DNA of 64,000 nt. It comes from Magallana gigas. Taxonomy: Eukaryota. The notes under the pieces were generated by a model. It saw only the letters and a list, made by a program, of their open reading frames with translations, had not been told where the DNA came from and made no database searches. The stretch is taken from positions 38,750,001 to 38,814,000 of the forward strand of contig NC_088860.1 in the NCBI RefSeq assembly GCF_963853765.1, given 5' to 3'. The position numbers were made by a program, and so were the translations under genes. How positions within the stretch are numbered: the first letter of the stretch is position 1; every line of letters begins with the position of its first letter. Shown here one piece after another: positions 37,137-40,100 of the stretch.

Positions 37137-40100
37137 CTACACTTCGTCTTCTTCCTCCTCTCGATCGAGATCAACATGTACATCCTCTTCATGGACGTAA
37201 GCAGCATTGTCGAGCTGTATTGTTCCATTTCCTATATGCCTATTTGCAACATGGCCGTTTGCTTCTCTATAGTTTATTTCAGCGACGATTGTTTGTTGTT
37301 TTTGAGCATGGTCCCTCCCAATCCTCCCGTTTACTTCTTCAACTTCATCATGATCATCATCTTCGTCGTAATGACGTTCTATTCCGTTCTGCGGATAACG
37401 TTGACGCCCGTTAGCTATATCTTCAATAATATTGGGAAGGCGGGCTTCAACATCCGGTAGAGAATTCAACAATTTCTTGAAAAATAACTTATCGTCAACT
37501 CTAAGAGTAACATGTGTTTTTATGTAAAATCGTACTTCATCGTCCATCGTGTCCAAATCAGCATCTTGTCCAATGACAACAATCAAATGATTACTTCTAA
37601 CACGTAAGGATTTTTCACTGGCGATTCTAAACGTAAAAACGGACCATTCATCTTGTAGATGATTTCCAGAAAGAATGAATAAAGTGTGTAGAGAAAAGTC
37701 AATAGCTTTTAGAACATTCTCTTCCTTCGAGGCACCCGGGAGGAAGTCACGGTCTGGAAGACATAACAGGTACCCGTTGTCTTCCAATGTTGGTCGCAGT
37801 TCATTCATTATATAAGGCATTTCACAGTCGGGGTATGATACAAACGCGTGCTTTTTGTATACATCATCGTCAAATCCATCTTCTCCGTAGGTTTCTTGAA
37901 TAAAGTGTTTAATATCAGGTAGACTTTTGTTTTTGTTATCAATGTCTTTATACTGCGGCATGGAATATAACAATTTTTCGTGGAAAAGAGCCTGTTTTGC
38001 GTCAATGTACCGTCCTCTTTTAATATACCTTTGCATGTCTTTAATCATAATTTCTTTCAATGTCACGTCATAACATACCACAATTGCATAGTTTGTTCTT
38101 AATTCCTTGATTTTTTCTTGTGCCTCATTCCATGCGACCTTTAATAAGTCATCATCAATAAATTCGGTAGACAAAACAATCAACATTCTTTTGCTGTGCT
38201 TTACAATACTAGCAATGTTTTCTAAATATGTAAATCCAGCAACAAAATCTCTCATCATCTCACAAACAACATAATAATTTTTGTGGAATTCAAGATACTG
38301 CACGATATTTTCCATCACCCAGTCTGTAGTATCCGCCGCATGAAGAACTAAAACGTCAATAACTTCTTTTCTATCCTTATCATCTTTATCAAATGGATGA
38401 ATTCCAAGATATATGTACATTAAAACCTTTACCTCCAATCTGTACACGTAAATCAGACTTAGAAAAATTATAAGAAGAACAAGCACTATCGAACACGTTA
38501 TACTTGGTATAACCACATGCTTTGTCGAATCGAAATCTTCCAAGCAGACGAATTCCTCATCGTAAACACTGATGAAAAATTTACCTTTTTCGTCCTCGTC
38601 ATCAACATTGCAAGTGACGTCTGACACTTGTTCAATTGATCCTCGTCTTTGCAACATCCAGTGCTTCATCCACTTTGTGTGACAGTCACATTTAAAGGGA
38701 TTATTCATAATTTTTATATTTCTGATCTGCATTCTTTCAAGAACCCTTGGTAAGTTCACAAGATAATTTGAATCAAGAAGCAGTGTATCAAGGTTTTTCA
38801 TGTTCATCAAAGCATCATCATTTATGCTTACAATTTGATTTTCCGATAGGAATAATTGTCGAATTCTAGGGAAGTATTTTCGATTTCCGAGGCTAATAGT
38901 GGTGATATTGTTATTTTGGAACCACAAATCCAGAATACCGTCTGGTAGAAGTTTTGGAAGGAACACAAAGTGACGATTACGACAATCTACGATTGTGATG
39001 GATGTGAAAGCTCTCGTGTAACACGTGCAATTTGAAGGACATTTGTCGGTTAGTTTCTCACAGTATGTTTCACTGGCCGGTATGGTTATCATCTCACGAC
39101 CTTTCATATCCAATGGCTCTTGGCATTTCCAATCACTAAGAAAACTTTTGTCTGAGTCCAGGTATTCAAATTTTATACTTTGCGCAATAAATCTATTAAG
39201 ATGTATTATCCTACAATCGCAGTTTATAGGATTTCCTTCTAGTATAAGTCTATAGTATTTAAGTATGAAGATTAATTTTACCCTTATTACATGGTTAGAA
39301 TTATAGTTATATCTATCACTGCCATAATAGATTAATTCAATGTGATTAATTTTACAGCCTGTTAGATCAATCACCCGTTTTTTATCTTCTATATAAGCAA
39401 GAACTATTCCAGGATTGTCTATAATCTCTTTAGTATTTAAATCATCTTTTTTGTCCACACCATTTAAAATCTGATCGGCCATAATACTGTATGATATATT
39501 GCTTATATACGTTGTAAAATTTTTGAACTGTATAAGTGTATTTTTAAAGCTTGCAATTTGTAAATCGCTTAGGTAAAAGATAAACGTAGGTAATTGTGTG
39601 ATAGGATTTCTGTCAAAATATAAAGACTGCAATTTTGTTGAGTAAATTGGCCATTCCAAAGTATCTACAGAAACTATGCGGTTGTATTCTAAATGAATTT
39701 CTTGTAAATCATTCAAAAACTGAAAGGCATTTTTGTCGATTTTTTCAATGTTGTTGCTTGACATATCAAGGTAAATTAATTGCCGGTTATCCAAAAAGAG
39801 ATCTTCTTGAATTTCTTTTAGTTTGTTAGAATGAATATCAAAGTGTTTCAGGGAATATAATCCACCAAAAACTGTTAAAGGAAGACGTTCTATTTTATTT
39901 AAACTTAAATCAATGTGCTCCAAACCGTCAACATTTCGAAATAAATTTTCCGATATGTCTTGAATTTTATTCCCCGAAAATTGAATAATTTGTAAATCAC
40001 CATGTATGGTGTAATTGCCCAGAGTCCCAATTTTGTTCATGTTCAAATTGAGAAGTTTTCGTATATGATGTTTCTCAACAGTTATATGAAATGCTTTGGC

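What the first reader, a model, noticed from the sequence alone, without database searches (positions are those of the whole stretch)
38235..38252. TLR3-like BB-loop Pro-to-Ala switch in TIR1 of C and D but not B
Seen: the TIR1 BB loop is RDFVAG in C (38235-38252) and D (47742-47759) but RDFIPG in B (24023-24040). TIR2 keeps Pro in all three (23510-23527, 37734-37751, 47241-47258). Known: this proline is needed for MyD88-dependent signalling (mouse TLR4 P712H), and human TLR3 has Ala here, with reversion to Pro redirecting it to MyD88. Inference: C and D may carry one MyD88-competent TIR and one alternative-adaptor or inert TIR, whereas B has two Pro-type TIRs. The GCT and GCA codons differ, so the Ala is retained despite synonymous divergence.
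Basis: partly seen in the sequence, partly recalled or inferred. Interest (0 to 1): 0.7.

Follow-up and report, generated by a model that had tools for sequence, protein, structure and literature searches.

The report
Oyster twin-TIR receptor loop variant
Two of three neighbouring oyster Toll-like receptor genes carry alanine, not the usual proline, in a key signalling loop of their first TIR domain; alanine is the old conserved state and the third gene gained its proline later, so this is a modest variant of a known receptor family, not a TLR3-like pathway switch.

Summary
On the minus strand, TIR1 reads RDFVAG in genes C and D and RDFIPG in B, and TIR2 has Pro in all three. The Ala aligns with human TLR2 P681, so it sits at the BB-loop proline position.

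The window is Crassostrea (Magallana) gigas/angulata. The genes are the known bivalve twin-TIR ("Toll-2", "SPP-2TIR") receptors. Gene order D-C-B-A is the same in C. virginica.

- Among 88 twin-TIR proteins, TIR1 has A/I/V/L/F at this site in 80 and Pro in 8. Six of those 8 are the oyster B orthogroup.
- Full-length trees nest B inside an all-Ala oyster/pearl-oyster/scallop group. The AU test rejects the alternative (p = 0.00012).
- Parsimony gives Ala to Pro on the B stem.

TIR1 is not inert. Its non-synonymous divergence between the two Crassostrea species is as low as that of TIR2, while synonymous sites are saturated.

The TLR3 analogy is weak. Only 28 of the 82 nearest single-TIR invertebrate TLRs have Pro here, dipteran Toll-like proteins have Val or Ala, and TRIF-like adaptors are reported only from jawed vertebrates.

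Most likely the residue tunes TIR-TIR packing rather than switching pathway. Earlier notes of this scan had already identified these genes as known twin-TIR receptors.

The parts
38235..38252 (-). Gene C TIR1 BB loop, RDFVAG (Ala codon GCT)
47742..47759 (-). Gene D TIR1 BB loop, RDFVAG (Ala codon GCA)
24023..24040 (-). Gene B TIR1 BB loop, RDFIPG (derived Pro, codon CCA)
37734..37751 (-). Gene C TIR2 BB loop, RDFLPG
47241..47258 (-). Gene D TIR2 BB loop, RDFIPG
23510..23527 (-). Gene B TIR2 BB loop, RDFIPG
37956..38369 (-). Gene C TIR1 domain (residues 850-987)
   Evidence: HMM hit; Pfam; complete TIR fold
37449..37853 (-). Gene C TIR2 domain (residues 1022-1156)
37137..40916 (-). Gene C, intronless twin-TIR TLR (1259 aa ORF; some gene calls start 22 codons later); transcribed
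46674..50369 (-). Gene D, twin-TIR TLR (1231 aa); its cluster includes XP_011450129 'protein toll' of C. gigas
22499..26728 (-). Gene B, twin-TIR TLR. The ORF from TTG is 1409 aa; called proteins are 1373 aa, starting at the ATG at 26620. It has a long acidic C-terminal tail
7290..9368 (-). Gene A, ectodomain-only paralogue without TIR domains (context only; it has no BB loop)

Best explanation
B, C and D are the three conserved oyster orthogroups of the bivalve twin-TIR Toll-like receptor family: a multiple-cysteine-cluster LRR ectodomain, a transmembrane helix, a membrane-proximal TIR1 and a distal TIR2.

TIR1 is an old, strongly constrained TIR subtype. The residue before the Gly in its R-D-F-x-x-G BB-loop motif has been small or aliphatic (Ala, Val or Ile) since before the bivalve orders split. 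TIR2 keeps the RDFxPG form.

The Ala in C and D is therefore the retained ancestral state. In the B lineage, after the oyster-specific duplications, Ala changed to Pro and the neighbouring Val changed to Ile. This made the TIR1 loop identical to that of TIR2. It happened on a branch where TIR1 evolved about twice as fast, and the Pro has been kept since.

Inferred mechanism: both TIRs take part in signalling, with TIR2 as the stronger output domain and TIR1 as an amplifier in cis. The apex residue is a hydrophobic plug that fits the pocket between strand E and helix E of a neighbouring TIR. Ala against Pro would then tune assembly or partner preference quantitatively, not switch to a TRIF-like pathway.

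Shown here: the position, the conservation, the polarity and the constraint. Inferred: the structural role of the residue and its effect on signalling.
For: Position: the Ala aligns with TLR2 P681 and lies in the loop between strand B and helix B of a complete TIR fold.

Survey: across 88 twin-TIR proteins TIR1 has A38 I19 V16 P8 L6 F1, and TIR2 has Pro in 62.

Polarity:
- The oyster B+C+D clade has 100/99 support in the 88-row tree and in the full-length tree, with Ala-type Pinctada, P0013 and scallops as successive outgroups.
- Fitch parsimony gives Ala at the oyster ancestor and at every deeper node.
- The AU test on full-length proteins rejects B lying outside the other pteriomorph rows (delta lnL 72.7, p = 0.00012).
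- A55P is one of only two TIR1 positions that are fixed in B while C, D and all six outgroups agree on another residue.

Constraint:
- Between C. gigas and C. virginica, dN in TIR1 is 0.071 (C), 0.085 (D) and 0.186 (B). In TIR2 it is 0.067, 0.047 and 0.091. In the ectodomain it is 0.28-0.42. Synonymous sites are saturated.
- The motif is invariant in the roughly 90 sampled cluster members that include it.
- Both the Ala and the Pro codons vary synonymously between species.

Context: gene order D-C-B-A is the same in C. virginica, and gene C is transcribed.

Literature:
- In Hcu_Toll-2-2, the construct with both TIRs activates an antimicrobial-peptide promoter more than TIR-2 alone, which does more than TIR-1 alone (PMC4929906).
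- In TRIF filaments the BB-loop Pro is buried in the pocket between strand E and helix E. In TRAM that apex position is a Cys (PMC11745336).
- The Toll/TLR group pattern is R-D-F-x-x-G, without a conserved Pro (PMC7075850).
Against: No adaptor-binding or signalling data exist for these three genes.

The AlphaFold model gives no confident TIR1-TIR2 arrangement (pTM 0.46, disordered linker), so the plug-in-pocket role is by analogy only.

Strict invariance of Ala within C and D, and of Pro within B, is also what a qualitative specificity determinant would show.

The TIR-only AU test did not reject the alternative topology (p = 0.104). The decisive test needed the ectodomain as well.

The deletion-construct data come from a unionid receptor in Drosophila cells. 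Its TIR1 apex residue I did not see directly; unionid relatives have Ile or Val.
Confidence: 0.6

Rival explanations
1. Ala at the BB-loop apex marks a TLR3-like TIR1 that cannot use MyD88. It either recruits another adaptor (for example SARM or a bivalve-specific TIR adaptor) or is inert. C and D would then signal through two different routes, and B through two MyD88-type TIRs.
For: Human TLR3 has Ala at this position, and the title of Verstak et al. 2013 reports that Ala-to-Pro switches adaptor use from TRIF to MyD88. The Ala/Pro states are invariant within each orthogroup. B's Pro was kept after it arose.
Against: Ala is ancestral, not a switch in C and D. TIR1 is as constrained as TIR2, so it is not inert. 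Pro is absent from 54 of the 82 nearest single-TIR TLRs and from both loops of 24 of 88 twin-TIR receptors. Dipteran Toll-like proteins have Val or Ala here. TRIF-like TIRs are reported only from jawed vertebrates. The closest solved TIRs to TIR1 are TLR15 and TLR2, not TLR3. A TIR-1-only construct of a unionid relative still activated the reporter weakly.
Confidence: 0.12
2. Nearly neutral variation. The apex position accepts any small or aliphatic residue or Pro. The Ala/Pro difference between paralogues has no functional consequence, and its within-lineage constancy only reflects slow change in a highly conserved loop.
For: Across the family the site takes A, I, V, L, F and P, while the flanking R, D, F and G are invariant. 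Pro arose in TIR1 at least three times on long branches: oyster B, Mya arenaria and a chiton. The Toll/TLR group pattern lists the site as 'x'.
Against: There is no variation at all within any of the three oyster orthogroups across genera, although synonymous sites are saturated and synonymous codons changed. The site is one of only two B-derived fixed differences in TIR1. In vertebrate TLR2 and TLR4 and in TLR3, substitutions here have strong effects (and established knowledge of TLR4 P712H).
Confidence: 0.25

Closest known systems
Bivalve twin-TIR Toll-like receptors (Toll-2 family of Cao et al. 2016, PMC4929906; SPP-2TIR of Saco et al. 2023, PMC10279657; 'Twin-TIR' type in PMC8181103)
   Same: Same architecture: multiple-cysteine-cluster LRR ectodomain, transmembrane helix and two tandem TIRs. 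B, C and D are 36-85% identical over the twin-TIR region to named members from Saccostrea, Pinctada, Pecten, Mytilus, Sinanodonta and Cyclina. They fall inside that family in the trees.
   Different: Nothing structural; these genes are members. The consistent split at the BB loop (TIR1 non-Pro, TIR2 Pro) and the B-lineage change to Pro are not mentioned in the two open papers I could search (no 'BB loop' or 'proline').
Human TLR3 TIR domain (BB-loop Ala795)
   Same: Ala at the position that is Pro in most vertebrate TLRs. The motif context is similar (R-D-F-x-A-G).
   Different: TIR1 is not a TLR3 orthologue. Its best solved matches are TLR15 and TLR2 (E 8e-6 to 1e-4), against 1e-3 for TLR3. 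The TLR3 partner TRIF has no reported counterpart outside jawed vertebrates. Here the Ala sits in the first of two TIRs on one chain, and related receptors use Val or Ile at the same site.
Other TIR domains with a non-Pro BB-loop apex: TRAM (Cys117), dipteran Toll-like proteins (Val/Ala), Tollo (Val)
   Same: A hydrophobic non-Pro residue precedes the conserved Gly. In TRAM this residue is buried in the neighbouring TIR's pocket. Anastrepha Toll-like proteins read RDWLVG and RDWLAG, and Anopheles and Lingula Tollo read RDFPVG.
   Different: These are single-TIR proteins or adaptors. No structure exists of a twin-TIR assembly to show what the TIR1 apex touches.

Membership tests
Bivalve twin-TIR TLR (Toll-2 / SPP-2TIR) | LRR ectodomain with internal cysteine clusters, one transmembrane helix, two tandem TIR domains on one chain | tested here: met
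   Pfam finds LRR_8, LRRNT and two TIR stretches in B, C and D. AlphaFold gives two complete TIR folds. Foldseek top hits are the TLR1/6/2/10 TIRs.
Bivalve twin-TIR TLR (Toll-2 / SPP-2TIR) | Sequence and phylogenetic affinity to named twin-TIR receptors of other bivalves | tested here: met
   E-values of 1e-232 to 1e-62 against 41 twin-TIR proteins, including 'Twin-TIR-TLR [Cyclina sinensis]'. The genes are nested in the family tree.
Canonical TIR Box 2 / BB loop (RDxxPG) | R-D-(aromatic)-x-x-G after strand B | tested here: met
   R, D, F and G are invariant in both TIRs of 20 aligned twin-TIR proteins.
Canonical TIR Box 2 / BB loop (RDxxPG) | Pro immediately before the Gly | tested here: not met
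   Ala in TIR1 of C and D. Pro is present in TIR1 of B and in TIR2 of all three.
TLR3-like, TRIF-coupled TIR | Ala at the BB-loop apex | tested here: met
   TIR1 of C and D only.
TLR3-like, TRIF-coupled TIR | Closest sequence affinity to TLR3 TIR domains | tested here: not met
   Best solved matches are TLR15 and TLR2 (E 8e-6 to 9e-5); TLR3 scores E 1.2e-3. In the family tree TIR1 belongs to the mollusc twin-TIR lineage.
TLR3-like, TRIF-coupled TIR | A TRIF-type adaptor in the same organism, and binding to it | not testable with these tools
   Only literature is available: TRIF-like TIRs are reported as restricted to jawed vertebrates (PMC7075850). I did not search the oyster genome for adaptors.

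The most novel reading that the evidence does not exclude
The TIR1 apex residue acts as a selectivity switch among the many oyster TIR adaptors (for example MyD88 paralogues). On this reading, the B lineage's secondary gain of Pro (with Val to Ile, which copies the TIR2 loop) was an adaptive change. It created a receptor with two identical Pro-type loops and a different adaptor stoichiometry or partner, giving division of labour within the conserved D-C-B-A cluster.
Probability: 0.15. Interest if true: 0.55.

Novelty: new member of a known kind. Interest (0 to 1): 0.3.

Why it matters
Twin-TIR receptors are a mollusc speciality, and why they carry two signalling domains is unresolved. The two domains differ systematically at the best-studied signalling residue of TIR domains, and one oyster paralogue reverted. 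This gives a cheap and well-defined mutagenesis target (one codon in each of three neighbouring genes) for asking what the extra TIR does. It is also a caution: the vertebrate rule that the BB-loop proline means MyD88 signalling should not be carried over to protostome Toll receptors, most of which lack that proline.

Tried and rejected
- dN/dS between C. gigas and C. virginica: synonymous sites are saturated (pS above 0.75), so only dN could be compared.
- AU test on the TIR region alone: not decisive (p = 0.104).
- AU test on 41 full-length rows: did not finish in two attempts. A 20-row subset finished.
- AlphaFold of the twin-TIR segment, to see whether the TIR1 loop contacts TIR2: both domains are confident, but their relative position is not (pTM 0.46).
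- The look-up of encoding contigs for P0002: no record. The named C. virginica member P0182 worked.
- Micro gene conversion from TIR2 as the source of B's Ile-Pro pair. The two loops share 15 of 18 bases in C. gigas B but 12 of 18 in C. virginica B. Synonymous sites are saturated, so this cannot be tested.
- A rule of 'at least one Pro-type loop per receptor': rejected, because 24 of 88 twin-TIR proteins have none.
- Literature search for an explicit statement that Drosophila Toll has Val at this site: nothing found. My recollection of RDWLVG in D. melanogaster Toll stays marked as memory. The Anastrepha Toll-like protein shows it by tool.

Full report
**1. Observation**

The three motifs are exactly as described. 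On the minus strand, 38235-38252 and 47742-47759 translate to RDFVAG, and 24023-24040 translates to RDFIPG. The codons are AGA GAT TTT GTT GCT GGA in gene C and CGA GAT TTT GTA GCA GGA in gene D. The TIR2 motifs contain Pro at the stated coordinates.

The motif is the BB loop:
- phmmer against PDB sequences aligns C's RDFVAG column for column with human TLR2 RDFIPG (1FYW) and with the P681H mutant RDFIHG (1FYX).
- In an AlphaFold model of C's twin-TIR segment the motif lies between strand B and helix B of a complete TIR fold.
- The closest solved folds to that model are the TLR1, TLR6, TLR2 and TLR10 TIR domains.

**2. What the genes are**

The window holds four intronless minus-strand genes:
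- A: 7290-9368
- B: 22499-26728 (called proteins start at the ATG at 26620)
- C: 37137-40916
- D: 46674-50369

B, C and D have an LRR ectodomain, a transmembrane helix and two TIR domains. A has the ectodomain only, and no TIR remnant lies anywhere in the window.

The cluster of near-identical proteins that contains D includes XP_011450129 'protein toll [Crassostrea gigas]' and a C. angulata protein, so the genome is C. (Magallana) gigas or angulata.

The genes belong to the published bivalve twin-TIR family. It is called 'Toll-2' in PMC4929906 and 'SPP-2TIR' in PMC10279657, and PMC8181103 lists a 'Twin-TIR' type. Earlier notes of this scan had reached the same identification.

In C. virginica the orthologues lie in the same order and orientation on CM130318.1: D, C, B, then a 700-aa LRR-only gene.

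Gene C is transcribed:
- PolyA RNA-seq reads lie only within about 37094-41200; the bins at 36800-37093, beyond the stop codon, are empty.
- All read pairs have one orientation.
- No splice joints are seen.
- A contig from an RNA library spans the whole gene, with no difference at the BB loop.

**3. Survey of the position**

A word-indexed search gave 43 relatives, and an exhaustive profile search gave 150 representatives. I read the BB-loop column from separate TIR1 and TIR2 profile alignments.

| Set | Residue before the Gly |
|---|---|
| TIR1 of 88 twin-TIR proteins | A 38, I 19, V 16, P 8, L 6, F 1 |
| TIR2 of the same 88 | P 62, L 10, V 6, A 5, others 5 |
| 82 nearest single-TIR TLRs | V 43, P 28, I 5, L 3, A 2, C 1 |

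Taxa by TIR1 residue:
- Ala: oyster C and D groups, Pinctada, scallops and some clams.
- Val: mussels and Cyclina.
- Ile: unionids.
- Pro: the oyster B orthogroup (six rows, including C. virginica and Saccostrea echinata), one Mya arenaria protein and one chiton protein.

Twenty-four of the 88 twin-TIR receptors have no Pro in either loop.

Named single-TIR examples are Anastrepha ludens 'protein toll-like' with RDWLVG and RDWLAG, and Anopheles and Lingula Tollo with RDFPVG.

This agrees with Toshchakov and Neuwald. Their pattern for the Toll/TLR group is R-D-F-x-x-G, with no conserved Pro (PMC7075850).

**4. Polarity**

- In the TIR-region tree of 42 rows, the oysters form D + (C + B), and B sits on a long stem.
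- In the careful 88-row tree, which includes distant twin-TIR outgroups, the oyster B+C+D clade has 100/99 support.
- Fitch parsimony assigns Ala to the oyster ancestor and to every deeper node.
- The full-length tree gives the same oyster clade (100/99), Pinctada as its sister (100/98), and an unresolved B/C/D trichotomy.
- The AU test on the TIR region alone could not reject B lying outside the other pteriomorph rows (p = 0.104).
- The same test on 20 full-length proteins did reject it (delta lnL 72.7, p = 0.00012).

So the event was Ala to Pro on the B stem, not Pro to Ala in C and D.

Only ten positions of the twin-TIR region are fixed differently in B and in C+D. Ala55Pro is one of just two in TIR1 where all six outgroups agree with C and D. 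The neighbouring Val-to-Ile change makes B's TIR1 loop identical in protein sequence to its TIR2 loop.

**5. Constraint**

TIR1 is not a decaying domain. Identity between this genome and Saccostrea:

| Gene | TIR1 | TIR2 |
|---|---|---|
| C | 88% | 87% |
| D | 82% | 88% |
| B | 65% | 71% |

Non-synonymous divergence (dN) between C. gigas and C. virginica, where synonymous sites are saturated:

| Region | C | D | B |
|---|---|---|---|
| TIR1 | 0.071 | 0.085 | 0.186 |
| TIR2 | 0.067 | 0.047 | 0.091 |
| Ectodomain | 0.32 | 0.28 | 0.42 |

Measured against Pinctada, B's TIR1 is clearly the fast one: 46.7% identity, against 69.9% for C and 61.8% for D.

The Ala codons are GCT, GCA, GCT and GCC in C and D of the two species, and the Pro codons in B are CCA and CCC. 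The motif is invariant in the roughly 90 sampled cluster members that include it.

It applies equally to B's Pro.

**6. Mechanism**

*What is shown.* The two TIRs of this family differ systematically at the BB-loop apex. Both are under strong purifying selection. One oyster paralogue secondarily acquired the TIR2-type loop in TIR1.

*What I infer.* The apex residue is a hydrophobic plug for the pocket between strand E and helix E of a neighbouring TIR. This is how the Pro of TRIF and the Cys of TRAM behave in filament structures (PMC11745336). Ala, Val, Ile or Pro would then tune assembly rather than redirect signalling.

*Functional data on a relative.* With the unionid Hcu_Toll-2-2, the construct carrying both TIRs was more active than TIR-2 alone, which was more active than TIR-1 alone (PMC4929906). 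This fits TIR1 as a contributing amplifier. Unionid relatives in my survey carry Ile or Val at the apex. Oyster single-TIR TLRs signal through MyD88 (PMC3788107).

*The TLR3 analogy.* It rests on a real result (the Verstak et al. 2013 title, cited in PMC9653405). However, TRIF-like TIR domains are reported only from jawed vertebrates, TIR1 is not close to TLR3, and most protostome Toll-type TIRs lack the Pro.

*From memory, not from a tool.* D. melanogaster Toll reads RDWLVG and signals through dMyD88, and IL-1R1 also lacks this Pro.

**7. Limits**

- There is no binding or reporter evidence for these three genes.
- The AlphaFold model does not place the two TIRs relative to each other (pTM 0.46; the linker has pLDDT below 50).
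- The group used in the AU test was defined by the trait, but I had already seen the first tree.
- Most representative proteins carry no taxon name, so lineage statements beyond the named species rest on tree position.
- I could not access Gerdol et al. 2017, which coined 'twin-TIR', so I cannot exclude that the loop difference is noted there.

**8. Verdict**

The family is known. What remains is a tidy lineage-diagnostic Ala-to-Pro change in one paralogue and a family-wide asymmetry between TIR1 and TIR2. Both are of moderate interest and easy to test.

Noticed in passing
window 7290-9368 (-); L003 23378-23741: The ectodomain-only paralogue A has a counterpart in C. virginica. A 700-aa LRR-only gene lies downstream of the B orthologue, in the same position and orientation, so the truncated form is conserved between the two species.
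   Followed up: partly
window 22499-23200 (-): Gene B has a C-terminal tail of about 215 residues beyond TIR2, rich in Asp, Glu and Ser, much longer than the tails of C and D (about 85 and 80 residues). It evolves fast (dN 0.66 between C. gigas and C. virginica).
   Followed up: no
P0014 (B-clade member, species unnamed): One B-lineage protein has Pro in TIR1 but Leu in TIR2 (RDFVLG), the reverse of the usual family pattern. Mya arenaria P0054 is similar (Pro in TIR1, Ile in TIR2).
   Followed up: no
P0088 (Liolophura sinensis, chiton): A chiton protein matches both the TIR1 and the TIR2 profiles, so the twin-TIR architecture seems to extend beyond bivalves. It sits on a very long branch, so its placement is unsure.
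   Followed up: no
P0042 (927 aa) and P0090 (798 aa): These relatives end within or just after TIR1 and have no TIR2. They could be TIR1-only receptors or truncated gene models.
   Followed up: no
P0075 (1617 aa), P0081 (1279 aa): Representative proteins with three or four TIR2-like stretches on one chain. They may be fused gene models or true multi-TIR proteins.
   Followed up: no
window 25359-26102 (+): A 247-aa ORF lies antisense to the ectodomain-coding part of gene B. It is probably a chance ORF in AT-rich coding sequence.
   Followed up: no
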